From positions 1-64,000 of the forward strand of contig MQRK01177746.1 of assembly GCA_001938485.1 (NCBI GenBank): DNA of 64,000 nucleotides, read 5' to 3'. This document shows, piece after piece, positions 1,673 to 61,880 of this stretch (position 1 is the stretch's first letter; the number at the start of each line of letters is the position of its first letter). The stretch is from Girardia tigrina (lineage: Eukaryota). The notes beneath the pieces are model-generated. The model had not been told where the DNA came from. It saw only the letters and a list, made by a program, of their open reading frames with translations, and did not search any database. A program made the translations under genes and the position numbers.

Positions 1673-2730
1673 CAGTTGTCCCCGCTTAATCCGCACCCCG
1701 CCTATTCTGCAATCACTGCCCAATTTGCGTTAAGATCATTAAATTATAAATTTTTGGCGGTTTAGACCCATATTTTAATGAAAATTTCTCAATCTGCCAA
1801 TCCCCGCCTAATCCGCGTTTAAAAAAACAATTTTAAATTTTTTTATTATTATTTTTATCAAGTTTATAAAGAGTTTCGATGAATTCANNNNNNNNNNNNN
1901 NNNNNNNNNNNNNNNNNNNNNNNNNNNNNNNNNNNNNAGTTTATAAAGAGTTTCGATGAATTCATCACTTTCGTAATTAATTTCGTCATTTTAAAGTTGT
2001 TTACTAAGTTTTTAATAAATTTGTTTTAATATTATCCTTTAAATGGGAATTCATTTAAGTTTTGATCAAAAAGAAGAAATAATTCAATATAAGAAGAAAT
2101 TTAAGAAGACAACACACGCTCAATTGAAGTGTTATTTTGATGAGAAGTTTAAAAAGAATATAGGCCTTCGAACAATTGGTGATATTTTGAAGAATGAAGA
2201 GTCTATATTGGCTGCAGCGGCCAATACGAGGGCCGGAACAAAGAAAATTGTACAACCAGCATATCCAGATTTAGAAAAAGTCTTAGAATTATGGTGTGAT
2301 AATCAAGAAGCAATTAACAATCCCATAACTGAAGCAATAATTATCTCTCAGGCAGAATTGTTCGCAGCGGAGCTTAATATAGAGAATTACAGTATGTCAA
2401 ACGGTACTCTGTCGCGTTTTAAGAGGAGAATAGGAATGAAAGCAAGAAATGTGCAAGGCGAGATGGCTAATGTTAAAATTAATGATTTTTCTCAAGAAAT
2501 AGAATCGATTAAAATTTTAATGTCTAATTAAGATTCAAGTGATATTTTAAATATGGATGAAACTGGGCTTTACTATCGCTCTGTTCCCATCCAATCTAAT
2601 TCAAAGGCTCCTATTAAAGAATAACCTTGGTATTTTGTGTTTCTTTAACAGGTGAAAAACTTCCACCTTTTATGATTGGTACAGCAATAAAGTCGCGTTC
2701 TTTTAATTCTTTCAATTTTCGAGATTACAT
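1673..2730 (+). mobile_element. pogo/Tigger-type DNA transposon, 5' part (transposase 2043 to about 2730, degenerate)
   Basis: TA followed by TIR cagttgtcccccgcttaatccgc. The ORF has psq and CENP-B-like HTH domains (YPDLEKVLELW...SNGTLSRFKRR), then a stop followed by DIFNMDETGLYYR. Confidence 0.85.
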
Positions 2731-9077: not shown

Positions 9078-9335
9078 CCGTAAAATTATTAATTCTTAAA
9101 TCAAATTTTTAATCTTTAAGTCAATTAGATGGAATATAAACAATTAAGTTAAAAATAACTACAAAATTATTACTTCTTAAATTAAAATTTTAATCATTAA
9201 ATCGATCAGATAGGATAGAAACAATTAAATTAAATTAACCACAAAATTACAACTTCTTAAATTAAATTTTTTAATCTTTAAATCAATTATTTAAGATATA
9301 AATCATTAAATTAAATCAGCCATAAAATTATTATT
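9078..9335. repeat. Tandem repeat of about 81 bp, 3 or more copies
   Basis: aaaatta.(t/a)a.ttcttaaat.aaa.ttttaatc.ttaa recurs at about 9082, 9163, 9243 and, partially, 9324. Confidence 0.7.
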
Positions 9336-15272: not shown

Positions 15273-16319
15273 CAAGGCTTCAATTTTTTCTATTCCCTTT
15301 CCCGTTTTCGTTCACGGGAATGCAATTTTAAAAATTTATGATAACTATTTAAATAGGTAGTCAAAAATAATAAATTATTAAGCTAAAATAGTTGAAATAT
15401 ATTTTATCATTTTTTGTTTGCATTATATAAATAACTTTCATTTTTTACTTCATATTAATTTTGTTAGGGTTTCGAAAAATACATATGAACATTTTTGACA
15501 AAATTTTATATAGAAAAATTTAAAATAATTCTTTTGGTAAAAGTATTAATTTTAAATAAAATAATATTTAGTTTAACAAAAGTTGGAATTGAAAATTAAA
15601 AATATTTTAGTCTTTGTTTTACTTCACCAATTTTCAAGGATGATGAAAACTACTATGTAAACAACAGCAAATCTAGTTTTAGTTTGCCCAAAAAATTATC
15701 TCATCAAAAACAAAAGGAAGCAAGTAAACTCATAGAATTTTTGTTATTTATTATTCTTTTTAAAATATTATTCTTTTTAAACCATAAATAACCCGTATGG
15801 GAGAAAAAGATTTAATTTAAATTTAAACATTCGTTCGTTTTGGAGATTCACAGTTTTTGCTGTAATCTGTTAACTCGTACGAAATATTGTTTTGTGTTCT
15901 GTCATCAAGAATTGAATTATTATTATTATTTTTGATTTGTTTATTTTTGTTATTTGAAATAAAGTTTCATAAAAGAATTTGTGTTCATTGTCTACATATT
16001 TATGTTGGAAGTCCTTTCTGATTAATTGGAGTCAGATTAAAGATTTCAGATTAAAGATTTCAGATTAAAGATTTCAGATTAAAGATTACAGATTAAAGAT
16101 TAAAGTTTAAATAATAAATATTTACAATTAAACATTTAAGATTTGTGTTATAAAAAGTAAATAATTATTATTAATACCCAACAATTTTGTTAACTCATAT
16201 GTCCGGGATATCCGTTCCCGAGAAATATGAAAATGGGAACGGAATTTTCGAAAATCCATTTCCCCGGATTTGGAAATGAAAATCCTAAAAATTAATTTCT
16301 TGGGAAATTTGAAGCCCTG
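15273..16319. mobile_element. Non-autonomous hAT-like element
   Basis: TIRs caaggcttcaattt / aaatttgaagccctg; subterminal ttccc/gggaa repeats; weak 8-bp TSD (5/8 match). Confidence 0.6.
16033..16104. repeat. 14-bp tandem repeat (cagattaaagattt), 5 copies
   Basis: Read directly from the sequence. Confidence 0.9.
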
Positions 16320-20439: not shown

Positions 20440-21205
20440 TTAGGTTGTCCGGAAAGTTCGTAGCGTTTTTCATATTTGATTTCAAGACTGTAATTTTTTA
20501 CTGTTCCCTTTATTTTTCCATGCTTTTTTAATGGTTTCATCAATATTCATATATTATCTTTAAAATCAATTAATTTTCAATTTTTTATTTTCCTAATTAT
20601 GGCCGAAAATAAAATTCATTTAAGAAATGTAATGCTATTTTTTATAATAAGAAGAAAAACACTGCCGAAACGCAGAAAAAAATTTGCGACCTTTATGGTT
20701 CTAGTGCATTTAGGGAAAATATAGTGCGTAAGTGGTTTGCTAACTTCAAGAAAGGTGATTTCAACCTGCAAGATGCAGAAAAATCTGGTCACCCGTCCAC
20801 TATAGATGACGATGAACTGAAAATGAAAATCGCCAAAAATCCGAAAATAAACGTTCAAGACTTGGCATAATTATTGCAGATATCAAAAAGTGCAGTACAT
20901 GAACATTTACAGAAGCTTGATTTTGTTTCAAGACTTTATGCTTGGGTGCCACCTAAATTAACAGAAAAAGTGCTTTCTGATAGAGTTTTTGTCTGCATTT
21001 CGCTCCTCAAAAGAAATAAAGAGAGTCCGGTTCTAAAGCGGCTAATTACCGGCGATTAAAAATGGATAATGTACGATAACGTACAACGCAAAAGATCATG
21101 AGGTAAGCTGGAAAATAAGGCTCTCACATCAGCTAAACCGGATTAGCACCAAAAAAGTTTTATTGAGCGTTGGGTGGGATTGGAAGGGCGTGATTTATTA
21201 CGAGC
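20440..21205 (+). mobile_element. mariner transposon 5' fragment (degenerate transposase)
   Basis: TIR ttaggttgtccggaaagttcg; motifs RKWFANFKKGDFNLQD..SGHP, WVPPKL, LITGD*KWIMYDN and WDWKGVIYYE. Confidence 0.85.
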
Positions 21206-22105
21206 ATACATGTTTGTGTTGAGTGTGTATAAATGAAATTGAATTAGTTATAATTTATAAAATGTAAAGGCGCCATGTACTGTAGCCCGTAGCCCGTAGC
21301 CCATAATTTGAAGGCCGTAGCCCGTAAATTCACGCCCGGCCTGTACGGGCTCCACCCCAGGTTATAAACGTAAGTATATGTGTGAATGTGAAAGTTTTTG
21401 ATTTGATTTGACAGTTGAGTGTGTGTAAGTTATGTGTGTAAAGGCTTTTTTTGATGAAATTTAATCACAATTTCAATCAAATAAAAAAAATCAATTTCAA
21501 ATGGGTGAAAGAAAACAAAATCGATATTATAAATCAGAAATCGAATGCGTTATGTGTATCCTGGAGTCTGAAGGGATTTGTCATTAATCAGTACGACAAT
21601 TTGATTAATGAAAAGCGCTCGAGTGCGATCAAAGACATTTTTGACTCCCTCAGAGCATCTCCATAGGCCCGCATGCTCCCTTCTTCCTTTCAATTCGGAA
21701 AAAGATATATATAACAAGATTTATTAACACAACAATACAACTTGCATCAACAATTAAAAACAACGAATTTCTGTCAATTTCCAGATTGGATAATTTTTAC
21801 CACGGTTAAGTTCAATAAAGGTTTTAAACTTCCACTTCATTTCAGCAGGAGCAACTTGATTTGTCACACGGATTTTGAAATAATGACAAAATGTTTGGAT
21901 GTTGCGATATCTTATAACGTTTATTATATTTATTTTATTTGATACATTAAAACAAAACATATTATAATAATATTATTTATATATTACTTTTAATATAATA
22001 AAACAAACACTTGTTATTAATTTGTTTTAATGAATCACTTTTAATAAATAGATACAAGGCGGGAATTTGAATTATGATGGATACAGTGACATTCATTTTT
22101 AACAA

Positions 22106-22543
22106 ATGCTGTGTAAAATCAATTAGAAAGGATTTACTCAAGATTGTCTAAAAGACCTCCATTTTGGTACTAAACCGTATCAATGTGTTTTACACTTTCC
22201 GGAGTACACCATTATATTCTTCCGCAATGGAAAATGCCGAATAATGGACTATAAACAACCAATTGATCCATTCACTTTACCATTCAATATCACCAATGTT
22301 AGTTTACAATCTATTACAGTGACGTGTGATTATGGTGAGCCCATAAATATCAATGCTTTGAAAAAGACTACTCCGAATCATTATGAACCTGAAATGTTTC
22401 CTTCTTTGAGATTAACTTGTTTTAATCCAATATGTGTAAATGTTTTTGGTTTTGGGAAAATTATAATCACCAGTTTGAGAGATTTGAACTATAAGGATTT
22501 TGTTACACGTGTTTGTGACTATATTTTGTTTAAAACTATGTAA
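22106..22543 (+). pseudogene. Miniature intronless TATA-binding-protein (TBP)-like gene, 145 codons, premature TAG at codon 7
   Basis: MLCKIN*KG...YTIIFFRNGKCRIMDYK (first TBP repeat, like LIFxSGK). Then SLQSITVTCDYGEPININAL...HYEPEMFPSLRL..NPICVNVFGFGKIIITSLR (second repeat, like NIVGSCDVKFPIRLEGL..YEPELFPGL..LLIFVSGKVVLTG). Confidence 0.85.
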
Positions 22544-23468
22544 GTTGTGTTTCAAATATATTTTTTGGTATCTTCATTCCAAATCTTGTGTATATTTTAC
22601 ATTGTACATATTTGTTGCAGCTTTAAAAGCTATGTAAATAAATGTTTGTTGAAATTACTCGTTTTATACATGTCTTTATTCATAAACTTGTAAACAACAA
22701 CTTTTATTATATATAATATTGATATATACTATAAAATGTTAACTGTGCAATTCGTTGACATGATGGTTGATAATAATCACTTAGCTGATTATGTAGATGT
22801 TATGTATAATGTCGATGCATGCTTTAAGTATTATAGGAGTTTTATACATTTAGTTTTTACATCTAAAATAAAAGGTTATATATCTTGGTTATGGTAACCA
22901 TGGTGCTAGAGATTGTTAAGAAGGTACATTAGGCAATTAATGAGTTATGGTTTGATGGTAAATACATGCATATATCATAGGGGTTTCAGATATATACGAA
23001 AAAATGATTTTTGAGCACTTTTTTGAGAATTTCAGAAATGTTCGAAAAATCAATTTATCAGCCCTTTTACAAAAATGTTAATATGGAATCTGAATGTACG
23101 TTATGGGTTACTATTCAAGTGCATTAGCACTTTTTTGATATTCTGCTTCCTTGAACCTCGAAAATCGATGTGCATTTTGTGTAAATTTGCACATTGTGTT
23201 AATTATAGAGAAAAGTAATCAATATATAAAATTTCTAATTGCACATTTAGATAGAGAATCATAATGTGCATCAAACTCATGATATTGATTTTTGACACTT
23301 AAAAAATTTTATGTATTGATTTTTGCACTTTTGCACATGTGCAGCTTGAAAAGCACTGTGTTATCATATTAGAAATGTGTGGCACAATGGGCACTATCGA
23401 TCAGCACTTAAAATATCGATTAGCACATCTTGGCACTGTACAGCAATCGATTAGAACTTTTTTCTACA

Positions 23469-23711
23469 CTTGCTAAGGAAAGGGTCACAGTTGCTATGGA
23501 TACGGTAACCGTTACCATGGTTACAACCGCCTTGAATCACTGTATCGTTGCTAATGAAAAACATCCCTTGGTTACCGTTGATATGGTAACTAAGACCTTG
23601 GTTACCGTTACCAAGTGAACCGGTAACAGGGACCGTTGCCATAGTAACCTAGACCGTTGCTATGGTAACCGCGACCGTTTCTATGGTAATTGAACCTGTG
23701 TCCATGGTAAC
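23469..23711. promoter_or_regulatory. Array of 7 or more RFX X-box-like palindromes
   Basis: GTTGCTATGGATAC (23490), GTTACCATGGTTAC (23511), GTTGATATGGTAAC (23577), GTTGCCATAGTAAC (23635), GTTGCTATGGTAAC (23656), GTTTCTATGGTAAT (23677), GTGTCCATGGTAAC (23698). These match the X-box consensus GTNRCY-N2-RGYAAC, some with mismatches. Confidence 0.7.
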
Positions 23712-23789
23712 CTTTGTCGAATGCTCATTTTCCCCCTACTAATTGTTCAATTTAGCCGATATATTTGCCTGAATGCTAATGCTCACCAA

Positions 23790-24833
23790 GACGAGAAAAC
23801 GCTACGGAAAATATTGCTGAATAGATGGATATATAAATATGGACTACCTAAATAAATCGATGTGGATAGAGGCAAAACATTTGATTCAGAACTATTTAAA
23901 GAAACACTGAAGAAGTTTAAGGAGTATTTTATTCAGCTATGTATCACCACAATGCCAATGGAATTATTGAACGACAATTTAGAACAATTAAATATGCTCT
24001 TAATATCAGAATAAAGGATAGAACGCATAGAGATTGGACGGAAGTATTGTCAGAAATAGAATTTATGATGAATAGTACCATTTAAGCCACGACAGGTATA
24101 TATATATCACCAGCAGAAATAATATATGGAAGGAAATTAAGACATTGGTGGAAAAATAAAGAAGATAAAAGAAACCAAATAGGAACATAAGAAAAAGCTC
24201 CAGAAACGAGAAGAATTTTTAAAGTTGGAGACCAGGTATTAATAAAGAGAGAAAATGCATCAAAAGAAGACGACCGATATATTGGCCCTGCAATGATAAT
24301 AAGACGGAGACATGAAAGAAGTTACGAATTGCTACTCGACAATGGTAAAATACTAATATGAAATATAGAATGGCTAAAGCCATTTAAATCGAGGGGGATG
24401 TGAGGGATAATTTGGAATGTTGTAAGTTTGTTGTTTGTATGATGTTTAGATTTGTGACTCTCTTACTCAGATGGGATTGATATGTTTATTGATTGATTAT
24501 TTGAATTTAATGATATTAATTTTAAGTACTAATTAATTAAAGTTTTATAATTATGAATTTTAATTATATTTTTAGTAAACGATTTTAACTTATTAAATTT
24601 AATATATTTTAAAAATTAATGTTTATTTAAAAAATTACTAATGCATTTTATCCAATAAAATTATGAAAAATTAAAAGTTAATATTAAAAGAATTTCTCAT
24701 TCATTGTTTTTTTTAGATTTGAATATATAAAAAAACTATATTAATCAAAGAAAGATGCTTACTGAGAATTGTTGTGAAGAATCTGTTTGTGTTGTCAATA
24801 AATGTTTACATTCAAATTGTGATGTTTCTAATA
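23790..24833 (+). mobile_element. Gypsy 3' fragment: integrase C-terminus, PPT and 3' LTR (24399-24833)
   Basis: Homologous to 56160-56770 (WIYKYGLP..DVDRGK..HHNANGIIERQFRTI..SPAEIIYGRKLRHWWK). PPT gaggggga, then tgtgaggga. Confidence 0.85.
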
Positions 24834-25546: not shown

Positions 25547-27108
25547 TTATTCTTCTTCACTCAGGAAACATTTAATAACAATTTCGTTGTTCAAAAATAA
25601 GTCTCGCGAAATATCAATTTTCGAGCACTTTAATTCTTTACCAAAAGTAATCCTACGATTTCTTTCATCCTTTGGTTTATCATGAAGTTTTTCTGTCAAT
25701 CTTGTTGCTCCATATTTATATGTAATGTTTACAATTATCTCTTCGGTGTCTTTGTTTATGATAGAAATATTAATATTATTTGTCATCGGCCAAGAAAGTT
25801 GTTCATCGAATTCTCCTTTCAAAATTGTCAACCCTAACATTACTAAATTTCCAGTCGAATACAAAGAAAGAGACATTTTATATCCTTCTTTGTGAGAATA
25901 AAATGGTTCACTTTCTAATTCAATTCCACGTTTTTTATTAAAACTTATATTTTTACCAATTTTCCATTCAAATACTTCATAGGTCTTTCGGCAAAAGACC
26001 TTTAATTTCTGAATTTTCTTTCTAAATCGGAAGAAAACTTCCTCGTCACTCTTTTGGTTTTTATCGATATCATCTGGTAGTTTCTTTAATTCATTTTCGA
26101 TATGGGTCTGAAAATAAGTTTCAATAAACATTTTATATTCAAAAGACTATAATCAAACTATAATAGATCAATAATGATAAAATTATTTGTATTCATCGAA
26201 GGATTGTTTACGCAATTATTTCGTAATAACTAAAATCTCAGAATATTTTAAACGAAGTAGAAGAACATGTTGATTTTTGGAGCAAGAGTATTAATCATCA
26301 GGTATTAACCAATCACCGTCTCCAAATAATTATCAAATTGTGAACAAAAAATTTTAAAATTACTTAGATTATGTAGATTTAAGTAATTTAAAAGTGATTG
26401 GGTACAGAATCCTTCGATATATAAATTTTAGTTTATCAATATTGATATATTATCCTTTTTCAAATATTTATATGAAAAATATATTTATGTACCTCATTAA
26501 TCAAGCGTCGATTCTCAAATTCAGAAATATATTCTATTAATTTTCCGATTTGATTTTGGAGCAACTGAATCATTTCCTGTTTAATATATAATAATTTAAT
26601 ATATTATTCTTATTAAATATCTTACGTCTCTCTCTTTTATACTTGTCTTTAGGTTAGCTATTTCTTTGCCGAAAAATTCTTTGGTATCATTAATACTTTT
26701 CGTGATGTTTTTTGTTATGAGTAAATGTGAGGAAATTTCATTTAAAGATTCAATTTCGTTTGAATTTATTTTACCTTTAAAAAACTGAGAATAACCATTC
26801 TTTTGAGCCACGCCTATTTCGTTTAGAGAACTGTTTTGTTCTTTGGTAGACGAAAGGGAGAACTGAGGGAATAATTTTGCAATTTCCTTCATTATCACTT
26901 TACTTTTCTTTATGTTTTTCACGGGGTTTAATATAAAATCTTTACAGTCTTCCTTTTGACCGGGACAAGGTTTTTCAGTTCCATTTAAATAATTTGTAAT
27001 GCAAGTTAAACAAAAAATACATCCACAAGGAGAATGATGAGCGTTCATCAAGATATTTTTACAAATGATACATTTGTACTTGTCTTCTACGTCCATAACT
27101 TCATTCAT
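25547..27108 (-). CDS. TRAF-family protein (RING, coiled coil, MATH), about 388 aa; exons 27108-26626, 26576-26493, 26146-25547
   Basis: RING CIICKNIL..PCGCIFCLTC..CP; GT-AG phase-0 introns; MATH domain FEWKI..SEPFYSHKEGYKMSLSLY..ILKGEFDEQLSWP..IVIKC. Reading frame is open throughout. Confidence 0.9.
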
Positions 27109-29250: not shown

Positions 29251-29892
29251 TTTGATATTTGTGCAACATTTCAATGCAAAACAGAACATTTAAAAATATT
29301 CTTAACTCTTATCTTTTTATGCAGACTCTTTTTAGTGATAATAAATCAATGGAGTCCTTTAAGCTTGCCTCTTTGCTTGATGTATTTTTATTGTATCTTT
29401 GTTTATGTTCTTATTTTTCCAGGAATCGAAAATTTACAACATTGAAAAAATCTTTTAAAAATCTCAATATTATAAAATTATTATTTTTAAATTATAAATA
29501 ACTTAAAGATTTGGATCGAGAATTTCTAAAACTAAAATTTCTAAAACGAAACTTACTAAAATCAAAATTTATAAAACTATAATTTTGAAAAGGAGAATTT
29601 TTAAAAACGAAATATTTGAAATAAAATATATTGAAATAATATTTCTAAACCTAAATTTATCTTAGTAAAATCACATAAACGTTCCCTATAAAACACATTA
29701 TTATCTTTTCAGAAAAAAATATGAAAATAAAACTTAAAATTTGGTTAAATTTACAAAATAAAATAAATCAGATAAGCAATTTTTGAATATTGCATTATAA
29801 GTTGTTTTATTTTATATTATATTATTAATATTGCATTATGCAAAAGAAATTTCGTTTTTAATGTATTTAAAATTCATTGATTGTTTCAAATA

Positions 29893-32324
29893 CTTAGGCT
29901 GTCCCAAAAGTCCTCAGGTGGCCTTTAAAAACACACTAATATTCTACCAAATTTAACCACATTTGGACTGAATATTATTCAGACTGTCATAAACACTGTA
30001 TTAAAATTTCAAAGCATAAAATTTGAAACTTACCAAAAAAATAATATTATTAACCAATAAAAAAATAGATGCAGCGAATTTAAAAATTTATTTAAAAAAT
30101 ATTTTAAAAATTTCTTAAGCAACAACATATTCACCATTGTTGTCAATAACCAACTGGCAATAGTTAAAAAGTTTAACTAGTTGATTTTTTAATGTTTCTG
30201 TTGATAAAGAATTAAAAAGGAATTTAAAAGCTTCTTCAATTTCTACATGTGATTTGAAACATGATTTGGTGGTGCGAGAGTGGGCGCAGCTTGGTGGCCG
30301 CGGCGTCCTAGCGCTGGGGGGTGGACTGCGGGACGCAGGGGGCTTAAATTCACAATCTCACCCAACCGGTCAAGAATCCGCCCGATATCGATTTTATTCT
30401 CTACAGTCAATTTTTAGATCTCCGATGAATTTATCTTCAGTCATTATGGCTTTAACATCATGTGGAACGTTTTTTGACAGGTTTTTGTAATTGAAAATAT
30501 ATGGTTGAAATATTTCTTCCCGAAGTTCAAGTGTCATTTTCGCCGGAGTCAGTTTCTCATCTCTAATAAATTGTTTTACGCCAGACACTTCAAATTTAAC
30601 GATCATAGTGATTAAAATGAAAAGACTTTCGATTAACAAATTTATTTTTCTTTCTACACTTTTACAGACAATGGCGACTTCAACTCCTTACAATTTTTAA
30701 CTTTTTCGCGCTGACTTTAAAAAAAACTGATCGATTTAAACAAATCGAAATAATTCACTTTTTTTCAAATAATTATAATAATATTTTTTTCTGTCTTTAC
30801 ATGATTTTGGCAACATTGCCCCCCTCTTTTTTTATTTATTTATATTTTTTAACATGTAAATAAAATAACTTTGGATGAAAAATAGTCATAATAATAAACA
30901 AAAAGTCGATAAATAATCTGTTATTCGGCTTTCGAAATTTTGCTGATTATAGAAATTATTATAATTGGATTTTATTTATCCAACTGATTTAAGGATTTTT
31001 TAAGTCTTCTTTCAAAACAGTTTTACTGGAGCCTTGATGAATCTTCCGCAATACCCAAAAATTGTCATAATGAATCATTTGCAAACTTTTCAACATTGAA
31101 TTGAGAGTTTGTAATTTTCCTGATTACTCTATGTCTCTCACAGAAGTCGCAGAAAGCCCGCAGAAACCAATCCTGGGCAGGCAACCACAGTCCGACTCCA
31201 CGTTTCGATCTTCGTATCACCGCGAATCCGACACCAGAACCCTGATCACTTTCTGATTTTGTTTTTCGTTTTTCACTCACCTCTAATTTCCACTTTCTCA
31301 TACTTTTTACAATCAAATATGATTTTTAAAACTTTTCTTCATTTTTGAAAACAAGAATCTCTCACAGATTAAAATCTGGACTATCGGGCGATTGATAATT
31401 TTTTTCAATTTTTCTTCTTTCAAAAAACGAGTTGTTTCTTTGCTAGAATGAGGTCTTGCATTATCATTCCACCACTTAAGTTCTTTTAGCTTGATGCTGT
31501 TAAATCTAAGTTTTCGCAATATTTCGCCGGTGTCATGAACAAAGTTCACATACGCCTCGGAATCAATCTTGGTACCATATGGCAGTGCTTTTACATTAAA
31601 ACATTTGTGATTTTCTTTCTTTCCTCTACCTTGGAAAAAGACCCATGTCTCATCATTGATCGCTATGTTGGAATATGCTTCATCACCCATCTGTAGCGTA
31701 TATGCTTTGCAGTGTTAATGCGTTGTTGTTTATTAGCAGCAGAAATGTCGTGAGGGACCCAAACAGAGCAACCTTTTTTGTAATGAAGTTTTTCACGCAA
31801 AATTTTGTGGACTGTATTTTTGCCTAAAGAAAGTTCATTTTCAATATAACACAAAGACACATTTAGAGCATCATCAATCACTTCTTTGACTGCTTTAATC
31901 TTTTCATCATCTATTAATGACGGCCTGCCATTTCTTGATGAATCGTCGAAGGATGTCCGCTTTTCTTTTTTAAAATCAGTCAACCATTATTGAATAGTTT
32001 TCAGTGCTGGGTGATTTGCGTCTTCCCATGCCTGCTGAAGAATTTCTGAAGCAGAGAATCCTCTTTTACTTTGAGTTAGAAAAAAAAACGTTGGCAACAT
32101 TTATTTGGTTCCATTGTTAAAAACCGCTTGATTTGAATTCGCTGCATTTTTAAAATTTCAATACTTTAATAAAAAAAAATTTTACTTTTTTTTAATTTTA
32201 TGCTTTGAAATTTTAACACAGTATTTATGACAGTCTGAATAATATTCAGTCCAAATTTGGTTACATTTGGTAAAATATTAGTGTGTTTTTAAAGGCCATC
32301 TGAGGACTTTTGGGACAGCCTAAG
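29893..32324 (-). mobile_element. mariner-like element with long (>130 bp) TIRs, degenerate transposase 32114-30115, interrupted by a solo LTR
   Basis: TA-flanked TIRs cttaggctgtcccaaaagtcctcag...; motifs RNGRP, WVPHDI, INDETWV, NDNARPH, SPDFNL and VIDNNGEY. Confidence 0.92.
30267..31319. mobile_element. Solo LTR (1053 bp) inserted in the mariner
   Basis: 5-bp TSD TGATT. Left end tggtggtgcgagagtgggcgcagc is homologous to the solo LTR at 61881 (tgatggtgcaagagtgggcgcagc). Confidence 0.75.
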
Positions 32325-32439
32325 TATTTAGAAAATTATTAATAAATAGATTCATACTTAAATTTACTTTACTCTATATTTTGATACCACCTATGACATT
32401 ATTGTTGTTAATTTAAGGTGTATTTATTTTATTTTAGAA

Positions 32440-46659: not shown

Positions 46660-47185
46660 TTTTTATTAAAATCAAGTACGACATTAAAATCAAATTTTAT
46701 TGAAGCAATATATTTCGGTGGATTTTCAATCACCTTCAGGCTGAATTAACAACAATTATATAGCAAATCGATGATTATGTAAACATCTTGCGCAATAACA
46801 AATTAAATATTTTCAACAAATTGAAAGAGAGATTTGTTTGGACTACAATGGCTGTATTAAGAGATTTAATCAATAATGCTTCACAAGAAACTCTTTCCCA
46901 ATAATTTTTAAAATTACTGCACAATATTTTAAAATTAGTTGTTTTCACCTCCGATTTACAACCCTTCATATGTCCAGCAATATTACTCCCATTACCCAAT
47001 CGTCCATGAATCCGTTTACAGAGATGACGAGACGTCTCTCCAATGTATGTAGAATCAACAAAAAAATGAACAAAGTACAGAAAATATAAGAAATAACAAA
47101 TAAAATAAACGTTGAATAATATAATCAAACAAAATAGCTAATTCAGAACGGAAATAATTATTTAGCCGCAATTATTCATTAGAGA
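46660..47185 (-). mobile_element. Penelope-like element fragment (GIY-YIG endonuclease plus pseudo-LTR)
   Basis: YIGETSRHL.KRI..H...FKIL..ERVSCEALLIKSLN; hammerhead-like motif in the 3' region. Confidence 0.8.
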
Positions 47186-48131
47186 ATATGACACATTTTG
47201 TAACTATTTTTATGAGAATAAAACGGTTGACTTTCAAGATTAATGGAATTATTAAGGAAATTCTTCTTCTCAATTCTACATTCGAATTCTTGGTTGATTG
47301 CAGCTTCAAGTTTCTGGATATTTTTTTTGAGTTCCATCAAATTTTCTACATCTTTTTTTCTTTGTTTGTTAAATTGAATTGAAATTTTTTGAGATTCTTT
47401 TTCTATTTTTGTCTAAAATTGAATCGATAAGATACATTCGTAAAACATCGAATTATATTTACCTCATTAAGTGATTCTTCTTTTTCAAGCTGAGAAACTT
47501 TGATGGCAAGGATTGCGAGTTGATCTTGAAGGGTTTGTATAAACTCCTAAACAAAAACACATTTTTAGATTAGTAACTTAACATTTATTAAACATTTTAC
47601 GTTTTTATCTTTAATAGTTTCCTTTAGATCCTCGTATTCTTTTGTAAAAGATTTTTTTTCTTTTTCAAACTCACTGAGATATTTTTTAAGCAAACTTGAA
47701 TGAGAAAGGCTTTCAGAAGAAAGATGTGTTTGAACATCTTTTATTTCCACAAAATCTGATTGACATCCAATATCACTATAAGGACATTTTGAACGGGCAT
47801 CATTACACTTATATGAGTGAGGAATTATATGCTTTAATTTGCCTTCTTTTTCACAAGAAGAGCATTTTACAACAATATTCGTAATCAAAGTAGCAAGAGT
47901 TAAACTGTAACGTATACTTCCATCGTTTAATGATACCTTGCCACATTTATTAGTTGATCCAGGACACAAATTTTCAGAGTTATTTAGATAATTTGCTATA
48001 CAATCCTTGCAGTAGGTGCAGCCACAAGGTCCAAAGTAAGGATTTATCAAAAGATCATGACAAATGATACACTTGTATTTGTTTTTAATGTTTGTTATTA
48101 AAAGAAAACGATTTCGATCTTCGGTATTCAT
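47179..48131 (-). CDS. TRAF-family paralogue (RING, zinc fingers, coiled coil, MATH start only), about 282 aa; exons 48131-47601, 47546-47463, 47412-47179
   Basis: RING CIICHDLL..PCGCTYCKDC..CP; TRAF zinc finger CPYSDIGC..H; the same 84-nt exon 2 as the 27-kb paralogue. Exon 3 reads ...FECRIEKK..ESQPFYSHKNSYKMCHIL* at the Penelope junction. Confidence 0.85.
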
Positions 48132-49859: not shown

Positions 49860-52800
49860 ACATTAATGGTAATTTTTAAAATTACTGCACAATATTTTAA
49901 AATTAGTTATTTTCACCTCCGATTTAAAACCCTCCGACCCTGGTCACATCATTTACATTCAAATTTTAACTATCAATTGATGTTTAAATAGAAGATTTAA
50001 ATTTTTGTAACCTTCTGAATAAGGAACGATTAGCGTATAATTTGTTGAAAATATTTAATTATTTATTAGGCAAGATGTTTGCATAATCATCGATTTGCTA
50101 TATACAGGTATCCCTCCTATAACACGGTCGATAGGTTCCAAAAATATGACGTGTTATGTGAAACCGTGCTATAGGAGACCAGATGCTGGTACAAAATGTG
50201 GGGTTAAGTTCCAAAAAAANNATTTAAATGCCACGGAATGAACATTAATTCTATTAAAGATAAAAAATAAATAAAAATTCAATTAATTATTCAAAAAAAC
50301 AAATATAAACCCACGTAAATGCATAAAAAACAAACAAAAATAGGCTGAAATATCCGTGGAAAAATTCCATGAATTTTTATTTTTATTGTTTTTCATTATC
50401 GCTGCTCAATTCCATTAATTGCGAATGTTTTTTCAGCCGAGTACTATCATCTGTACCTTCTGAACTTACATTGCTATTTTTTTCGCCCGTTGATACCTTA
50501 AAAAAATCCGTAATTTTGCCTTGTTTCCTTGTCCGTTCAAGGTTGTTGTAAATTTCTTGATACNNNNNNNNNNNNNNNNNNNNNNNNNNNNNNNNNNNNN
50601 NNNNNNNNNNNNNNNNNNNNNNNNNNNNNNNNNNNNNNNNNNNNNNNNNNNNNNNNNNNNNNNNNNNNNNNNNNNNNTTTTTTAGTGTCAAAATATTAAC
50701 TTCATTATATTCATCAGAGCTAGAATCGATTTCATTTATTTGGGGTTCGGATGCCATTTCCACCAAATCTGCTTCTCCAATTTCTTGTTCTACTAATAAG
50801 TCTTGTATGTCTTTGATGGCCATATCCACAAAACCCTCTCCTCCGACCAACCTAGCGCATTCTAAAATGGCACCAATTTCTTTTTCCCCTGATTCGTGCG
50901 CGCTTCCTAGTACAACTGCTGCTGGCCATATCTNNNNNNNNNNNNNNNNNNNNNNNNNNNNNNNNNNNNNNNNNNNNNNNNNNGCTGCTGGCCATATCTT
51001 TTTCCAACATCGATTTAATGTTGTAATTTTCAGTTCTTTCAGCGATAAAGATATGATGTCGATGCAATCTTTAATTGAAAATTGCTTCCAGGCTAACTTT
51101 ACCTCAATAGATTTGGAATCAGTTACATCTAAAATCCATTGTAATGATCTTCTTATGTAATATGTCTTAAAGGTATAAATAATACCTTGATCTAAAGGCT
51201 GTAGCAATGAAGTGGTGTTAGGAGGAAGAAANNNNNNNNNNNNNNNNNNNNNNNNNNNNNNNNNNNNNNNNNNNNNNNNNNNNNNNNNNNNNNNNNNNNN
51301 NNNNNNNTAAAAGCGCCTTGAAATTTAAATTATTGCGCTTTAAATAAGATTCTACTTCCGGAACAAAACAATTTAAAAACCAATTTCGAAATAAATCAGC
51401 AGTTACCCAAGCCTTTGAATTTGCTTTCCAAAGCGTTTTTATTTATGCCTTTAAGTGCACGGGGATTCAAAGATCTATAAATTAACATGGGCTTTGCCAT
51501 ATAATCACCCGAGGCATTACTCCACAAAAGTAACGTTACACGATCTTTTGATACCTTGAATCCAGGTGCAGTTTTTTCATTTTTAGATATAAATGTTCTA
51601 TTGGGCATTTTTTTCAACCAAAGCCCGGTTTCATCGGCTTTGAAAACTTGTTTCGGTGTATGTCCCTGCTCTTCAATTATTTTTTTTAACTTTTCTGGAA
51701 ATGATCCTGCAGATTCATGATCTGCTGATGCAATTTCACCTTGAATTTTTATGTTGTGAAGTGCAAAACGCTTTTTAAACTTCTCAAGCCAACCTTTACT
51801 GGCTCTAAAATCTGGGTTCTTAAAAGATTCAGTGTTTTTTTTAAGGTGTTCATAAATTTTAAGAGCCTTTTGCCTAATTATATTACTGTCCAATGGAATC
51901 TTTTTCTGGCAGCTATCATCAATCCAAATGCTAAGTGCTTTCTCCATTTTTTCAATTATTGGCACACGTGGACGAGCTGAAAACTTCGCGGACTTCGAGA
52001 ATCCTGCAACAACAGCACTTCTAATTTCATTCTCGCTTTTCTTAATTGTGCGGACTGTTGCCTCATTTAAATTTAGGTTTTTTGCAATGTTGGATGCCTT
52101 TTCTCCCTTTAGCAGACGATCCAAAATTTGCATTTTTACTTCTAAGGAAATAAACCTTCTCTTCTGGACTGTTTTTATGTTTTCACCAGACATAGTTTAG
52201 GACGGAAAATTATTTTTCTAAAAATAGTCATACTTAATTTAAAAATTAGCTCCTTATTAATTACAACAAAAAGCTCAATATAATCGATTCGTTTTAAATT
52301 AAACTTCATTAATTATTTTTGGTTATTATTTCGCAATTCCACAAAATATTGCGTTTTCTATTTTACAGAATACAGTCTGCGCTCTTGTGATGGGCTCCAC
52401 AAAATGCTAAAATACATGTTATTACAAATATATATGTTACAAAAATAATTAATAAAATTCAAATATAAACACCTGCATAGAATTGTTAAATTTTTAATCC
52501 AGCTTGCATACCAAGATTTTTTTTGAAACAGCAAAGTTGAGTACATACAAAAAAAATTAAGACTTGTTTCTTGAAGTAATAAAAATATGTGCATTTTAAA
52601 TTGTATTTTATGACAATAATATAATTTTCTTAAACAAATAGTGTTGTAGAAGTCCGTTTTATAATAGGTTTCAGAAAAAAAAATCGTGTTAGAGTGAAAT
52701 CGTGTTGTAGGATACCGTGTTGTAGGAGGGATACCTGTATAAGACAGTGAAATTCTTGTTAATTCGGTCTGAAGATCGTGGAAAATCCACCAAAATATTG

Positions 52801-52993: not shown

Positions 52994-55962
52994 AGGTTCA
53001 TGTACAATATATTTTTATGAAAGTTGCACCAGTGATTAACAAATATAAATTCCTACATAATCTTTGTTCATTTGAACCTCAATAATTTTTATTTCATCAA
53101 TTATGGAGCTAGGTTCGAGTTACGAATAATTAACACAGCCTTCGAATTAATTTTAATTTGAAATCAGTTGAATTTCATTGAATAATATTAGTGAACGAAG
53201 TAAATTTATAATTTACACCCAGCAAAAACATACAAATCACCAACAAATTGTGTGCACACATGACATTTAGTGACTGTATTGAATAAATCATACATACATT
53301 ATATGTAAATGTATATTTACATATAATATATACCATATTTATATTAATCTGAAAAAAAATAATTTAGTAAAAGTCGTTGAAGTTTTCTTAAGCTATGCTA
53401 TTGTTTTTGTTCATACATTAAAAGTAATCATTTCGTCTTTAGAAATTTCGGTTAAACAAACGGTTAAACGTTTAATTCTTTAAACGGCTTGTGTTTAAAC
53501 ATTTTACACTTGTTATTTAATTAAAAAGTTAATTCAATAAATATACAGACTTTTTAAAAATAGAAAAAAAACAACAACAGAACACTAAAAAAACTAACAA
53601 AAAATGGTCTATATTTTTATTACAGTGATAACAAACATGTATATATTTTATTGAAGAGCTATAATTCTATGAAAATAAGAAAGTTTGTCGATCTCATAAT
53701 AATATTCTGCTACTATGGCAGCTACGTTTTAGGATAAAATTGCTTATTGTTTCTGTTGTCCGGTTCCCTGTTATCGAAAAAAATTAGCCGAACCACATAA
53801 TTGTGAAACACCACGACGTTCTTCAGGATCCGCTCTGCCAGTCTCGGTCATCGTGTACCATTGTCATACCGCTGGGTCCGACGGGAACACGGGCGGACTG
53901 GGCGGGAACCGGGCTGACAGCAATCGCAGGTTTAGGACTCCGTGAGAATCTTCGTGGACTGACCGACAAGAATGTCCCGCAAGATTCGATCTAAGTTCGA
54001 AGAAGTGACTGTTCTTCTAAACAACAGTACTGAAAATGATTGAATTTCCTTTGCTAAGGCCACACTGTCACGAGCTCAAACCGTAAATCGGGATTTGAAT
54101 AGTTCTAGTTCCTGTAGGCTGATTTCTTTTCGGGATCTATCGAAATATGCTGCAGATCAACGATACAATCATTCAAAGTGAACAAAATTAAGATCGATAA
54201 AAGTAAATGTAAAAAAAAGTCGAACTGACAATTATTTAATTGAATTTTCACAAAAAAAAGTTATCCGACTGTAAAATCGTATTAATGAATTAAGAATAAA
54301 ATGTAACCACGATTAATTAAACATTTATTTAATAACGACAATTATTAAAACAAATGTATTTTTTTAGGATTTAATTAATATTTGAATTTTCATTAATTAA
54401 ATCTTTTCTCGACACTACAGCTTCTTCTTTCTTTAGGAGATGTAATCGCCTAGGTAGTTTGGTGGCTTGCGTTTTCGTTTTCCGTCTGTTCCGTTCTCCA
54501 TGATTTTTTCATAGTCCTTCCGGTGGTGTTCGGTCGTCCGATTGTCCACTTTTTCTTTCTCTGGTTCTGGCTTTTTCATGAGTCTTAGTTTTCCGGTGTT
54601 TATCGTAAATTTATTATCTGTTAGGAATGTGTGAGGTCCTATCTGCTTTTCCAATCTCCGGATAGGTCCTCCATGTGTTTGTACGATATCCCCGACTTTG
54701 AATTGGTTTGTAAATTGTGGCTTTCTCCTGTTATTTGCGTATTTTATTCGTTCTTGAATTTTCTTTTGTACAACTTTTTGAAGTTCTATTTTCTCCTCTG
54801 TCGGTTCATCTCTTCGTCTTATTTCTAAACGAGTATTAATTTTCCTTCCGAACATCAATTCTGCGGGTGTCTTTTCTGTAGTGCAATGCTTTGTTGCATG
54901 ATAGTTCAGTAAGTATTCTCGGATTCTCTTTTTAGCTTCTGAGAGGCCTTTTGGTACGCCTTCTGGTGTTAAAGCCTTCTTTACGTTTCTATTTATCCTT
55001 TCGACTGTTCCGTTAGCCTGTGGATTATAGATTGAAGATCTACGTTGTGTTATTCCACACTGCTATAGGAATCTTCTAAAATCGTCCGAGATAAATTGTG
55101 GTCCATTGTCAGTAGTCATGATCGTACAATAACCGAAACGGCTAAAGGTTTCTTCTAGGAATTCAATTATCGTTTCTGTAGATACTTCTGTTGTGATCTT
55201 GATTTCTGTAAATTTCGATTGATAATCAATTAAATTTAAAATATAATATTTTCGCTCGCTCATATCGTATTTCGGTCCTGCAATGTCCAAGGCTAAGTGA
55301 AACCAAGGTTCGATCGGCCATATTGATTCCTGTACCGGGCTTTCTCTTGGAATTGATCCGCAGCATACACACTTTGATATTGTTTCTTCTATATGCTTGT
55401 CCATCCCCGGCCACCAGTAGCTTGTTCTTAATCTGGTTTTAGTCTTTACCATTCCTTGGTGTCCTTCGTGAGCGATCTTCATTATTTTCTCTTGTAGACT
55501 TGTAGGTACAACAATTCTATCTCCTCGTAGTATGACTCCATTAGTTTTTGAAAATTCATATGGTTTCCTGAAGGCCATTCACAATTTATTGTTATCCGTT
55601 CCATCTGGATTGTCGAGGAACACTGCTAGTTTTGAGAGATCGTCATCTTTCTTCGTTTCTTCTTCTATTTCCTGAATGGTTATTGCATTCATATTAGTTA
55701 TGATAGCTACTTCGACGTTTTCTTCAAATCTCTCTTCGTACTCGTTTTTCCCAGATAACCTTGACAATCCATCTGCAACAACGTTGGTTTTTCCTTTGAT
55801 ATGTGAAACCGTGAAGTTATATGGTAAGAGCTTTGTAGCCCACCTTGAGATTCTGCATGGTGCCGTACCATCTCCATTAATGGCAGATAGTAGTTGTCGT
55901 AAGCTTTGGTGATCTGTTCTTACTTGAAATTTTCGTCCATAAAGGAATCTATGCAATCTCAT

Positions 55963-58900
55963 TGTTATGAGAACTCACAAAACATTTATTATATTCACAA
56001 TTTTTATCATCTTTATGATGATCAATATTATTGCTTTCACTAGAATCCTTCAATCAATTTTCAATATCTCCCATTATAATCTGAACTATACTTGATAAGA
56101 CTATTTTATTTAAAAATATTTAATTTAAATTTGATTTAAAAACCAAATATTCCTTATATCCTCCTCGATTTAAATGGCTTTAGCCATTCCACATTTCTGA
56201 TCAAAATTCTACCATCTTCTAGCTCCAATTCATAACTTCTTTCATATCTTCTGCTTTTTACTGTGGCAGGACCCATATATCGATCTTCTTCCTTTGCAGC
56301 ATTTTCTTTTTTTATCAACACTTTATCAACTGTATGAAATATTCGTTTGTCTCTATCGTATTTTCGCTCTTTTCTTTCTTATTACAACTCTGTTTCTTAG
56401 TATCTTTCCACCAATGTCTTAGCTTCCTACCAAATATCATTTCTGCTGGTGAGATTCCTGTGGTAGCTTGAATGGTAGCTTGAAATTCTACTTCTGCCAA
56501 TATTTCCGTCTAATCTTTGTAGGCTTGATCTTTTATCCTTATGTTCATAGCATCTCTAATAGTTCTAAATTGTCTTTCAATGATGCCATTGGTATTGTGA
56601 TGATAAGGACTGGAATAAATTATTTCTGCTTTAAATCTCTTCAGTGTGTCTTTGAAGAGTGTCGATTTGAATGCTTTACCTCTATCCACATGTATCTCTT
56701 TTGGTGGTCCGAATTTCCAAATCCATCTGTCCAGTAGTACCTTCCGAGCAGTTTTCTCATCTTGATGAATTACAGCATTTAGACTTATATACCTGCTAAA
56801 TTGATCAATTACAGCTAATATATATTGATATCCATTTAAAGTCCTTTTAAATGATCCGCAAAAATCCATATACAGCTTTTTAAATGGTTCATCAGCAAAT
56901 TGTTTAATAAAACTTTCTTTCGTTTTTTTGGTTAAAGTCTTTCTTTTTTGACAGTTTATGCAACATTTTACAATTTCCTTAATTATCTCTCTCATATTAA
57001 CCATATCAAAATCATCTTTCAAATAGTTATAAACCTTTTTACTACCAGCATGGCATTGAATCTTGTGAGCGTCTTCCACGAATTCTGTCCTTGTGGTTCT
57101 CGGAATCCAATATTTATTATCTATTGTTGTCACAATATTGTCTTTCAATATTCATTTCTTTGTTCTTCCCATTCTAATATCTTCTCTGATCTGATTTATT
57201 TCGTCATTATCTTTCTGCCATTTGAACTCTTTAGTTTCTTCGTCTAAAGCCAAGATTCGTGTTTTAATCTTTCCTTTCTTAGCTTCTTCGTGCATTGTTT
57301 GGCACTCACTACATAATTCACAAGAATTTCTCGACATTGCATCTGTATTTGAGTGTTTTTCTCCTTTTCGATATTCCATTCTCATATCCACACTACTAAG
57401 AAAATTTATCCATGTTTGAAATTGCGGTGTGATTGGGTTTTTCGTATTCAGCATGAAGGTAATAGCTTTATGATCAGTTCTTAGTAAAAATCTTTTACCG
57501 TATAAGAAGTGTTTAAAATTTTGCGTAAAATAATAAATTGCCATAACTCTTTTCTCGTAACACAATATCCAAGCTCGTGTTTGTTCATTTTATGTGATCC
57601 ATACGCGATCACTCTCTGTCTACCATACGTATCCTTCTGTGATAATACTGCCCCGATTGTATCGAAGCTTGCATCTGTATCCAGTATAAACTCCTTCTCA
57701 AAATCAGGATACCCCAGTATCGGGGTGTCAATCATTTTGTCTTTCAATTTTCGAAAAGCTTCCTCGCATTCTTCAGTCCATATTATTTTCTTGTCTTTAT
57801 TCTTACCACATAAACCCTCCAATACTTTTGAGTATTTTGCGTAATCTTTTAAAAATTTTCTGTAGTAATTTGTTAGACCCAAGAAACTTCTCAGATGTTT
57901 GATGCATGATGGGTTCTGAAATTTTTTAATGGCTTCAATCTTTGTTTGATCAGTTTCTATACCATTCTTACTGACAATATATCCTAAAAATGTTGTTCTT
58001 TCTGTTAAAAATTGACACTTTTCTGGGTTAATTCTTAAACCTGCTTCCTTTATTTTTTCCAGTACAATTTTTATTCGTTGCATATGCTCTTCTTTATTTT
58101 TTACAAAAACCAAAATATCGTCCAAATATACTACTGCCTCTTTCCAGTTTAAATCTCCTACGACTTTGACCATTAGCTCTTGGAAAGTTGCTGGGGCTGC
58201 TGCTATCCCGAACGGCATTCTTTTGAAACAATAATGTCCGTTCTTTGTTGAGAATGCTGTTTTAATCTTTGATTCTTCTTCCAACTCGACTTGGTAATAC
58301 GCGTTCCCAAGATCAATTGTACTAAAATATTGCGCACCATTCAGTGTGTTCAGCATGTCATCTACATTTGGAATAGGAAACACTGGCCTGACGGTAATTC
58401 TATTCAACTGGCGGAAGTCTACACAAACTCTTGTTTTTCCTTCTTCCATACGCATACTAACGGGAAATTCCATGGTGAGCTACACTTTTCGATTATGTCA
58501 TTTTCTTCGAAATTTTTAATAACATACTCCAATTTGTCCTCAAAGTGTTTTGGTTGCCGATAAGGTTTTACTAGTATTGGATCCCCGTGTATTTCTATTC
58601 TGTGTTTTGTCAATGATGTTTTCCCAATATCCCACTTATCAGCCATGAATACTGATTTATAATTTGCTAGAATCTTCATTAATTGCCCGTAAATTTGCTT
58701 GTCAAATATATACATTATTCTTCTTAGCCTGTCCTCATCTGATGGGTTGTCTCTAATCACCAATATTTTTCCACCTCGAGGTATCTGTCTTTTCAGTTTT
58801 ATTCTGAATTTATCCAAGAAATTTATACCTGCGATCATTTCGGGGTCTAGTTCTTTAACCACATAAAATTCTATTAACTTTTGTGTTCCCCCAATAGCCA

Positions 58901-60867: not shown

Positions 60868-61880
60868 CTCATGATGCTCCAGATGACGCTGAGTGCTTCT
60901 TTTTCTGATGCTGAGTATTTTCGTTCTGAATCATGAATAGTTCTGCTGATAAAGTAGATTGGTTTTTCAATCCCTTCTTGGATTTTGCTTAATACTGCTC
61001 CAAACCCGTTGTCTGAGGCATCTGTTGTCAGTATAGTTTCGGTTTTCATATCTGTCGAGTAGAATGCTTGTGGTACTGCCTCTGAGATTGCTTGTTTCAA
61101 CTTCTGAAATATTGCTTCCATATTTTCTGTCCACTGGAACGTTATTTCTGTTCTCGTCAAATTGTACAGTTTGTGTGATAATTCCGCGAATCCTGGAATG
61201 TTTGATCTATAGTATCCGGCCATTCCTAGAAATGATCTGAGTTGTTGTTTAGTCTTTGGAGTTTCGAAATCAATAATAGCTTTCAACGCTTCTGGCACTG
61301 GGTGTACTCCTGTTTTATTAATTAATTTTCCCAAAAAGACTATTTCTTCTTTGCAGCATAACGATTTCTCTTCATTAATTGTCACTCTATTCGATTTCAG
61401 CCGAAGTAATGTTTCATTCAGTCGTTGATCATGCTCCTCCATATTTTTCCCGTACACTAATATATCATCTAGATAACAGACAATGTCTTCACAGTGTCTG
61501 AGGATGTTCGTCATTACCCTCATGAATGCTGCTGGGGCATTTGCTAGATTAAATGGAAGTCGCTTGTATCTGAATAAACATATGTGCGTAATAAAAGCTG
61601 TTAAATCTCTGTCTTCTTTTCTGATGGGTAGTTGATGGTATGCTGAATTGAGATCCACTTTTGAGAATATTTGAGCTCCGTACAGCTTTTTGTGAATTTC
61701 TTCTTGAGTGGGTATTGGAAACTGATCGATTTTGATGTATTGGTTAATCTTCCTGTAATCGACTCACAGTCGAATTCCATTCTTCTTGTTTGCTATTACT
61801 ATTGGTGATACAAATGCTGATGACTCAATTGGCTCGATGACATCTTGTGCAATCAGTTTTCTTATCTCTTCAGCGACAGG

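What the first reader, a model, noticed from the sequence alone, without database searches (positions are those of the whole stretch)
21206..23743. Candidate undescribed mobile or virus-like cassette carrying its own TBP and a host-TF binding array
Seen: between a broken mariner and a Gypsy fragment lies a 2.5-kb block matching no standard TE I recognise. In order it has GTAGCCC repeats with a hairpin, TATAAA plus a small GT-AG intron-like segment (about 21370-21414), a decayed unknown ORF region (21451-21960), a miniature TBP-like gene, a GCAC/ATCGAT-rich field and an X-box array, ending ...TTTTCCCCCTACT(AAT), i.e. 5'-AGTAGGGGG on the other strand. Established: Polinton/Maverick termini start with AG/AGT repeats and have long TIRs, and large DNA viruses encode divergent TBPs. 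Inference: the terminal fragment of a Polinton-like or other DNA element that supplies its own basal transcription factor and recruits host RFX, possibly for activity in ciliated cells or the male germ line. No pPolB, integrase or capsid gene is present here, so the element class is unproven.
Basis: partly seen in the sequence, partly recalled or inferred. Interest (0 to 1): 0.85.

Follow-up and report, generated by a model that had tools for sequence, protein, structure and literature searches.

The report
Dead virus-like fragment with miniature TBP
The block holds a broken copy of a miniature TATA-binding-protein gene from a large, barely described family that, in at least one relative, sits in a Polinton-type virus-like element; the copy here is a dead fragment.

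Summary
The TBP-like gene is real. Pfam TBP scores E 4.6e-10 and only TBPs match the predicted fold. It is not the host TBP. It belongs to a large family of miniature TBPs of about 145-165 aa: 37 clusters at E<=1e-30 and 309 at E<=1e-10. In this family the first repeat has no helices and the second is complete.

One relative, 52% identical, lies on a 14-kb contig with an rve integrase and a faint A32-type ATPase hit. One paper lists TBP among accessory genes of such mid-size DNA viruses. The virus-like reading is therefore partly supported.

The window copy is dead. It has one in-frame stop and departs at 4 of 39 columns invariant in close relatives. No other element gene lies within 9-36 kb. 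It sits between a 3'-truncated mariner and a 5'-truncated Gypsy integrase.

The proposed terminus overlaps Gypsy-homologous sequence and has no inverted partner. The GCAC field and the 21-nt palindromic array are real, but RFX recruitment is untested. The hairpin, TATAAA and mini-intron are at chance level.

I fetched no DNA of other copies, because of the bar on fetching animal viruses.

The parts
20599..21207 (+). Neighbour: 3'-truncated mariner transposase fragment
   Evidence: HTH_48 E 5.3e-11. Partial Transposase_1 match, profile positions 25-47 of 80, ends at the junction. Translations.
21208..22105 (.). Unassigned left part of the block: GTAGCCC repeats (21282-21323), short ORFs, and an AT-rich imperfect palindrome (21927-22050) just upstream of the TBP-like gene
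   Evidence: No Pfam family reaching its cut-off and no homologue. Hairpin not significant. Self-complementary stretch at 70% identity. Whether it belongs to the element is unknown.
22106..22543 (+). Broken copy of a miniature TBP gene (family length about 145 aa): one in-frame stop, no frameshift against its closest relative
   Evidence: Pfam TBP E 4.6e-10. 89% identical and collinear with P0001. AlphaFold pLDDT 85 for the open stretch. Foldseek finds TBPs only. Departs at 4 of 39 columns invariant in the 9 close relatives.
22544..22990 (.). AT-rich non-coding spacer (GC 26%)
   Evidence: Composition. No Pfam hit for its ORFs.
22991..23468 (+). Field of strand-biased GCAC motifs with ATCGAT
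   Evidence: 12 GCAC on the + strand, the window's maximum per 480 nt, and 4 ATCGAT.
23469..23738 (.). 21-nt phased array of palindromic GGTAAC/GTTGC-type units (GC 46%)
   Evidence: TRF period 21. Register print. 14 of the window's 63 half-sites lie here.
23739..24412 (+). Neighbour: 5'-truncated Gypsy fragment (integrase core from residue 112 onward, then sequence related to the Gypsy at 56.1 kb)
   Evidence: tblastn against the window's own Gypsy IN ORF, 68% identity. Inverted repeat I1 between 24213-24412 and 56145-56344.

Best explanation
The block is a dead, truncated piece of a Polinton/Maverick-type (MELD-virus-like) DNA element that once integrated in this animal-type genome. Its one recognisable gene is a pseudogenised copy of an accessory gene typical of that lineage.

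That gene encodes a miniature TATA-binding protein of about 145 aa. It still spans the whole TBP saddle. Its first repeat is reduced to four strands without helices. Its second repeat is complete and keeps the two DNA-kinking phenylalanines and the acidic Y-E-P-E loop.

In live relatives this protein most likely binds AT-rich promoter elements of the element's own genes and nucleates host RNA polymerase II initiation there, without needing host TFIID. This step is inferred.

The 1.2 kb of non-coding DNA after the gene, with its GCAC field and 21-nt palindromic array, is most simply the structured non-coding end region of the element. This is also inferred, and weakly.

In this window nothing works any longer. 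The gene carries a stop, the rest of the element is gone, and both sides abut truncated transposons.
For: TBP identity.

Family: ten relatives at 43-92% identity. The profile search finds 2184 proteins at E<=1e-3, 309 at E<=1e-10 and 37 at E<=1e-30. About fifty of the 150 proteins listed, mostly 140-200 aa, match the whole profile in one stretch. Canonical two-repeat TBPs appear mostly from about 1e-15 (one four-stretch protein scores 1e-25). The N-terminus is conserved: most members start 7-10 residues before the window's open stretch.

Structure: the model of the intact relative P0001 has pLDDT 96.6 and pTM 0.86, with strands at 2-11, 26-30, 35-39 and 43-49 followed by a full repeat. TM-score is 0.73-0.78 to solved TBPs over about 170 columns. 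F91 and F107 are invariant in 72 sequences, and E87, P88 and E89 are conserved in at least 90%.

Context: P0008 lies on a 14,156-bp contig with 15 compact genes, including an rve integrase and a faint Pox_A32 hit.

Literature: the Fig. 5 legend of PMC8502044 lists TBP among accessory genes of MELD viruses.

Decay: one stop, and 4 of 39 invariant columns changed.
Against: The window itself holds no polymerase, integrase, ATPase, protease or capsid gene of such an element.

The link to Polinton-type elements rests on the gene table of a single 52%-identical relative, with one firm Pfam hit (rve) and one faint one. No protein-primed polymerase was seen in the 10 kb shown. I did not read any DNA of other copies.

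The function of the miniature TBP is inferred from fold and conserved residues only. The conserved asparagine of strand S1 in the second repeat is a serine in this family, so its DNA specificity may differ from that of TBP.
Confidence: 0.6

Rival explanations
1. A pseudogene of a lineage-specific cellular family of small TBP paralogues. It would be unrelated to any mobile element and would merely lie among transposon debris.
For: No element hallmark gene in the window. The closest relatives sit on short contigs, at most 1.9 kb, of unknown context. JGI names some of them plainly as TBP.
Against: A relative sits next to an rve integrase in a compact 14-kb gene array. The family is huge and fast-diverging, unlike basal transcription factors. 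Near-identical but distinct copies exist (P0001, P0003, P0006), one of them running into unrelated sequence.
Confidence: 0.15
2. A fragment of another kind of endogenised DNA virus that carries a TBP gene: a giant virus (Nucleocytoviricota), or an adenovirus-like MELD virus without integrase.
For: The viral fold library returns giant-virus TBP-like proteins. PMC8502044 reports an integrase-less MELD virus in a Hydra dataset.
Against: The viral matches are weak (best E 3.9e-4) and cover one repeat only. The relative's contig has an integrase and small compact genes.
Confidence: 0.15
3. The 21-nt array is a functional RFX (X-box) landing pad at the true terminus of the element, and it ties the element's activity to ciliated or germ-line cells.
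For: The palindromic 14-mers in 21-nt phase resemble X-boxes, and 14 of the window's 63 half-sites lie in 250 nt.
Against: A tandem repeat multiplies any motif it contains, so the enrichment is not independent evidence. The claimed end overlaps Gypsy homology. There is no inverted copy. There is no expression or binding evidence.
Confidence: 0.08

Closest known systems
Canonical TATA-binding protein and its paralogues (TBP, TRF/TLF)
   Same: Same fold across the whole saddle (TM-score 0.73-0.78). Pfam TBP match. Conserved phenylalanines and Y-E-P-E loop in the second repeat.
   Different: About 145 aa instead of a core of about 180 aa. The first repeat has no helices. The family scores 1e-30 to 1e-50 with its own profile, while canonical TBPs mostly score 1e-15 or weaker. 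One relative lies in a virus-like gene array.
TBP-like accessory genes of MELD viruses / adintovirus-like elements (Starrett et al. 2021, PMC8502044)
   Same: A TBP homologue carried by a mid-size DNA virus-like element with an integrase. That is the same kind of company as.
   Different: The paper mentions it only in figure legends. I could not see which virus carries it, or whether it is the miniature type. No sequence comparison was made, because fetching those records is barred.
Polinton/Maverick elements
   Same: rve integrase, a faint A32-type ATPase hit, and a compact array of about 14 kb in the relative's contig.
   Different: No protein-primed polymerase, capsid, protease, terminal inverted repeat or target duplication was shown, either here or in the relative.
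TBP-like proteins of giant viruses
   Same: Virus-borne TBP fold.
   Different: Those proteins are longer, 189-500 aa. The matches cover one repeat, at E no better than 3.9e-4.
RFX X-box motifs
   Same: Imperfect palindromic 14-mers with GTTGC / GGTAAC halves.
   Different: Here they are units of a 21-nt tandem repeat downstream of a pseudogene, not single sites in promoters. Binding is untested.

Membership tests
TBP superfamily (Pfam PF00352) | Significant match to the TBP repeat profile | tested here: met
   39.7 bits against a cut-off of 22.9, E 4.6e-10. All 72 aligned relatives match.
TBP superfamily (Pfam PF00352) | Two complete repeats, each S1-H1-S2-S3-S4-S5-H2 | tested here: not met
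   The model of the intact relative shows four strands and no helix in repeat 1, and a complete repeat 2. The sheet still aligns over the whole saddle.
TBP superfamily (Pfam PF00352) | DNA-kinking phenylalanine pairs (role known from the TBP-DNA structures; from my knowledge) | tested here: met
   Both phenylalanines of repeat 2 are invariant in 72 sequences. One phenylalanine of repeat 1 is invariant in 45. The fourth has no clear counterpart.
Host TBP/TRF2 orthologue | Groups with cellular two-repeat TBPs; single or low copy | tested here: not met
   Its own family is at 1e-30 to 1e-50, and two-repeat TBPs mostly start from about 1e-15. There are several near-identical copies. No tree was built.
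Polinton/Maverick | Protein-primed family B DNA polymerase | tested here: not met
   None among ORFs of at least 62 aa in 9-36 kb or the larger ORFs of the window. None is flagged in the relative's 10 kb, and the rest of that contig was not seen.
Polinton/Maverick | Retrovirus-like (rve) integrase | tested here: inconclusive
   Present in the relative's contig. In the window the only rve sequences are of Gypsy type.
Polinton/Maverick | Packaging ATPase, adenain-type protease, double and single jelly-roll capsid proteins | not testable with these tools
   There is only a faint Pox_A32 flag on a 208-aa product of the relative's contig.
Polinton/Maverick | Long terminal inverted repeats and 6-bp target duplication | tested here: not met
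   The block has no inverted copy of any part in the 64 kb. The right end abuts a truncated Gypsy integrase and the left end a truncated mariner, so no intact end is shown.
RFX-bound X-box array | Match to the X-box consensus | tested here: inconclusive
   One match to a strict pattern. Two exact and five one-mismatch matches to a looser one.
RFX-bound X-box array | Occupancy by RFX, or expression in RFX-dependent cell types | not testable with these tools
   No expression or binding data at hand.

The most novel reading that the evidence does not exclude
The miniature TBP, with a helix-less first repeat and a complete second repeat, is a hallmark accessory gene of a broad and so far uncharacterised clade of Polinton-type viruses of animals and other eukaryotes. 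It would give them their own promoter recognition. The phased palindromic and GCAC arrays next to the gene would be cognate cis-elements of the element's end.
Probability: 0.3. Interest if true: 0.7.

Novelty: new variant of a known kind. Interest (0 to 1): 0.5.

Why it matters
How Polinton-type elements and their virus relatives get their genes transcribed in the host nucleus is poorly understood. A large, conserved family of stripped-down TBPs travelling with them would point to a self-supplied basal factor. It would also offer a natural minimal version of the TBP saddle for structural study, and a convenient marker gene for finding such elements in genomes and metagenomes. The copy in this window is only a fossil; its value is as a pointer to the family.

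Tried and rejected
- ORF 21451-21663 has no homologue, and only a sub-threshold GSKIP hit.
- Six other short ORFs of the block have no Pfam hit: 21742-21939, 22736-22894 and 23430-23615 (+), and 21550-21714, 21754-21957 and 21977-22138 (-).
TRAF/MATH/RING genes point to an animal-type genome. A cnidarian is only my guess.
- The hairpin at the GTAGCCC repeats has z = -0.99 and is rejected.
- The TATAAA box and the GT-AG mini-intron are at chance frequency.
- No Rfam family or tRNA gene in the window.
- No second or inverted copy of the block in the window.
- 35 flank ORFs carry no virus-type domains.
- No supplementary files are held for PMC8502044.
- Further literature searches on Polinton/Maverick plus TBP found nothing beyond that paper.
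- An upstream peptide in another frame that looked TBP-like by eye was dropped. The family's conserved N-terminus shows that the protein starts within the main frame.

Full report
WHAT IS THERE

The window is AT-rich (GC 21-40%). It carries TRAF-type genes and many transposon remains, so it is an animal-type genome.

The block at 21206-23743 lies between two truncated transposons.
- On the left is a mariner fragment. It has a Mos1-type HTH and a partial DDE match that stops at the junction near 21207.
- On the right is a Gypsy integrase fragment. Its homology to the window's own Gypsy integrase ORF begins at 23739, at residue 112 of 211.

The block has no second copy, direct or inverted, anywhere in the 64 kb.

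THE GENE

One reading frame at 22106-22543 (+) matches the Pfam TBP repeat at E 4.6e-10, well above the curated cut-off. It matches solved archaeal and eukaryotic TBPs at about 1e-9. A model of its open stretch (pLDDT 85) finds only TBPs in the PDB. In the viral library it finds giant-virus TBP-like proteins, weakly.

THE FAMILY

The word-based search returned ten relatives of 43-92% identity, all with the TBP domain, from ENA and JGI assemblies. Three of them are near-identical to the window copy yet distinct from one another. One runs into unrelated sequence after 74 residues. The gene is therefore multi-copy somewhere close.

A profile of these sequences, scored against 1.84 billion representatives, found 2184 proteins at E<=1e-3, 309 at E<=1e-10 and 37 at E<=1e-30.
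- About fifty of the 150 proteins listed, mostly 140-200 aa, match the whole 145-position profile in one stretch.
- Ordinary two-repeat TBPs appear mostly from about 1e-15; one four-stretch protein scores 1e-25.
- Most members begin 7-10 residues before the window's open stretch, so the short length is the family's true architecture and not decay.

With 45 family members as alignment, the closest intact relative folds with pLDDT 96.6 and pTM 0.86. Four strands without any helix stand in for repeat 1. A complete S1-H1-S2-S3-S4-S5-H2 repeat follows. This model superposes on solved TBPs over about 170 columns at TM 0.73-0.78, so the whole saddle sheet is kept.

Two phenylalanines of repeat 2 are invariant in all 72 aligned sequences, and the E-P-E of the loop before them is conserved in at least 90%. 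By the tool alignments these residues align with the matching residues of solved TBPs. That they kink DNA and touch TFIIB is established knowledge that I cite from memory.

CONTEXT OF A RELATIVE, AND THE LITERATURE

Before I knew what the relatives were, I looked up where P0008 (52% identical) is encoded. No DNA came back, only a gene table. It describes a 14,156-bp contig with 15 closely packed genes.
- Almost all genes are on the strand opposite to the TBP gene.
- One is a 359-aa rve integrase.
- One is a 208-aa product with a faint Pox_A32 flag.
- Unnamed products of 687, 410 and 359 aa are also present.
- A 74-aa gene converges on the TBP gene, and it does so on a second contig too.

This is Polinton/Maverick-like company, though no polymerase is flagged in the part shown.

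Starrett et al. [quoted passage not shown] Six literature searches found nothing further.

STATE OF THE WINDOW COPY

Against its closest relative the gene has one in-frame stop and no frameshift. It departs at 4 of 39 columns that are invariant in the nine close relatives. No polymerase, integrase, ATPase, protease or capsid domain of such an element occurs in the flanks. It is a fossil.

THE NON-CODING PARTS

Downstream of the gene come three stretches:
- an AT-rich spacer;
- a field with 12 GCAC on one strand, the densest in the window, plus 4 ATCGAT;
- a GC-richer array (46% GC) of palindromic units in 21-nt phase.

These are real and non-random. But a tandem repeat multiplies whatever motif it holds, and nothing here shows binding by RFX or any other protein.

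The proposed terminus is doubtful. Its last five bases are already inside the Gypsy alignment, and no inverted partner exists.

The left 0.9 kb has no homologue and no Pfam family reaching its cut-off. Its hairpin, TATAAA and mini-intron are at chance level.

MECHANISM

- Shown: a TBP-fold gene of a distinct, large, conserved family, and one relative in an integrase-bearing compact array.
- Inferred: in live elements the miniature TBP binds promoter DNA of the element and recruits the host polymerase II machinery through the retained second-repeat surface. The loss of the first-repeat helices would remove surfaces that host partners use on that side.
- Inferred weakly: the motif arrays are cis-elements of the element's end region.

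RIVALS

- A cellular paralogue family: 0.15.
- A fragment of another TBP-carrying DNA virus: 0.15.

NOVELTY

A TBP gene in such elements has been noted before. The miniature architecture and the size of the family seem undescribed in the papers I could search. I rate it a new variant of a known kind, with interest 0.5.

STEPS LEFT OUT, AND SLIPS

After one search showed virus-like company in what is probably an animal setting, I made no further look-up, pattern scan or related-locus fetch of relatives' DNA.

One search was such a look-up, made before this was evident. It returned no DNA.

Three slips:
- In my own reasoning I recalled stretches of canonical TBP from memory.
- In my early reasoning I noted where the frame is interrupted. 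My queries, and my first two notes, carry the bounds of the open stretch.

I list no break places here. I made no spliced model, and I took no contig for human.

Noticed in passing
window 25547-27108 (-) and 47565-48131 (-): Exons of TRAF-like genes: a MATH domain, and RING plus TRAF-type zinc fingers. They mark the host as an animal-type genome with at least two TRAF-like loci in 64 kb.
   Followed up: partly
window 29888-30028 and 32189-32329: 141-nt inverted repeats, 94% complementary, enclosing 2.2 kb. This is probably a non-autonomous DNA transposon. A weak hAT dimerisation hit occurs in one unlocated ORF of 9-36 kb.
   Followed up: no
window 46757-46822 and 50039-50104; 46902-46965 and 49870-49933: 66-nt inverted repeats (92%) and a 64-nt direct repeat (97%) bracket about 3.2 kb that includes the second TRAF-like exon. 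This is a possible transposon capture or duplication.
   Followed up: no
window 54433-61658 (-): Gypsy-type retroelement sequence with two RT-RNase H ORFs, two integrase ORFs and a protease. It also holds 183-nt direct repeats at 55977 and 60425 (91%) and an N run at 59639-60414. It looks like two adjacent or nested copies.
   Followed up: no
window 2043-2531 (+) and 50383-52193 (-): pogo/Tc5-type transposase fragments with HTH_Tnp_Tc5 and DDE_1 domains. The second is interrupted by N runs.
   Followed up: no
window 9098-9315 and 16018-16129: An 81-nt tandem repeat in three copies, and a 14-nt tandem repeat in six overlapping registers.
   Followed up: no
window 21927-22050: An AT-rich, imperfectly self-complementary stretch (70% over 126 nt) immediately upstream of the TBP-like gene. 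It could be a promoter region or plain low complexity.
   Followed up: no
protein P0006 (223 aa, JGI): A relative that is 92% identical to the window copy over its first 74 residues and then continues into unrelated sequence. It is another broken copy elsewhere, showing that the gene is multi-copy.
   Followed up: partly
protein P0066 (376 aa): A family hit with four matched stretches, possibly a tandem duplication of TBP-like units.
   Followed up: no
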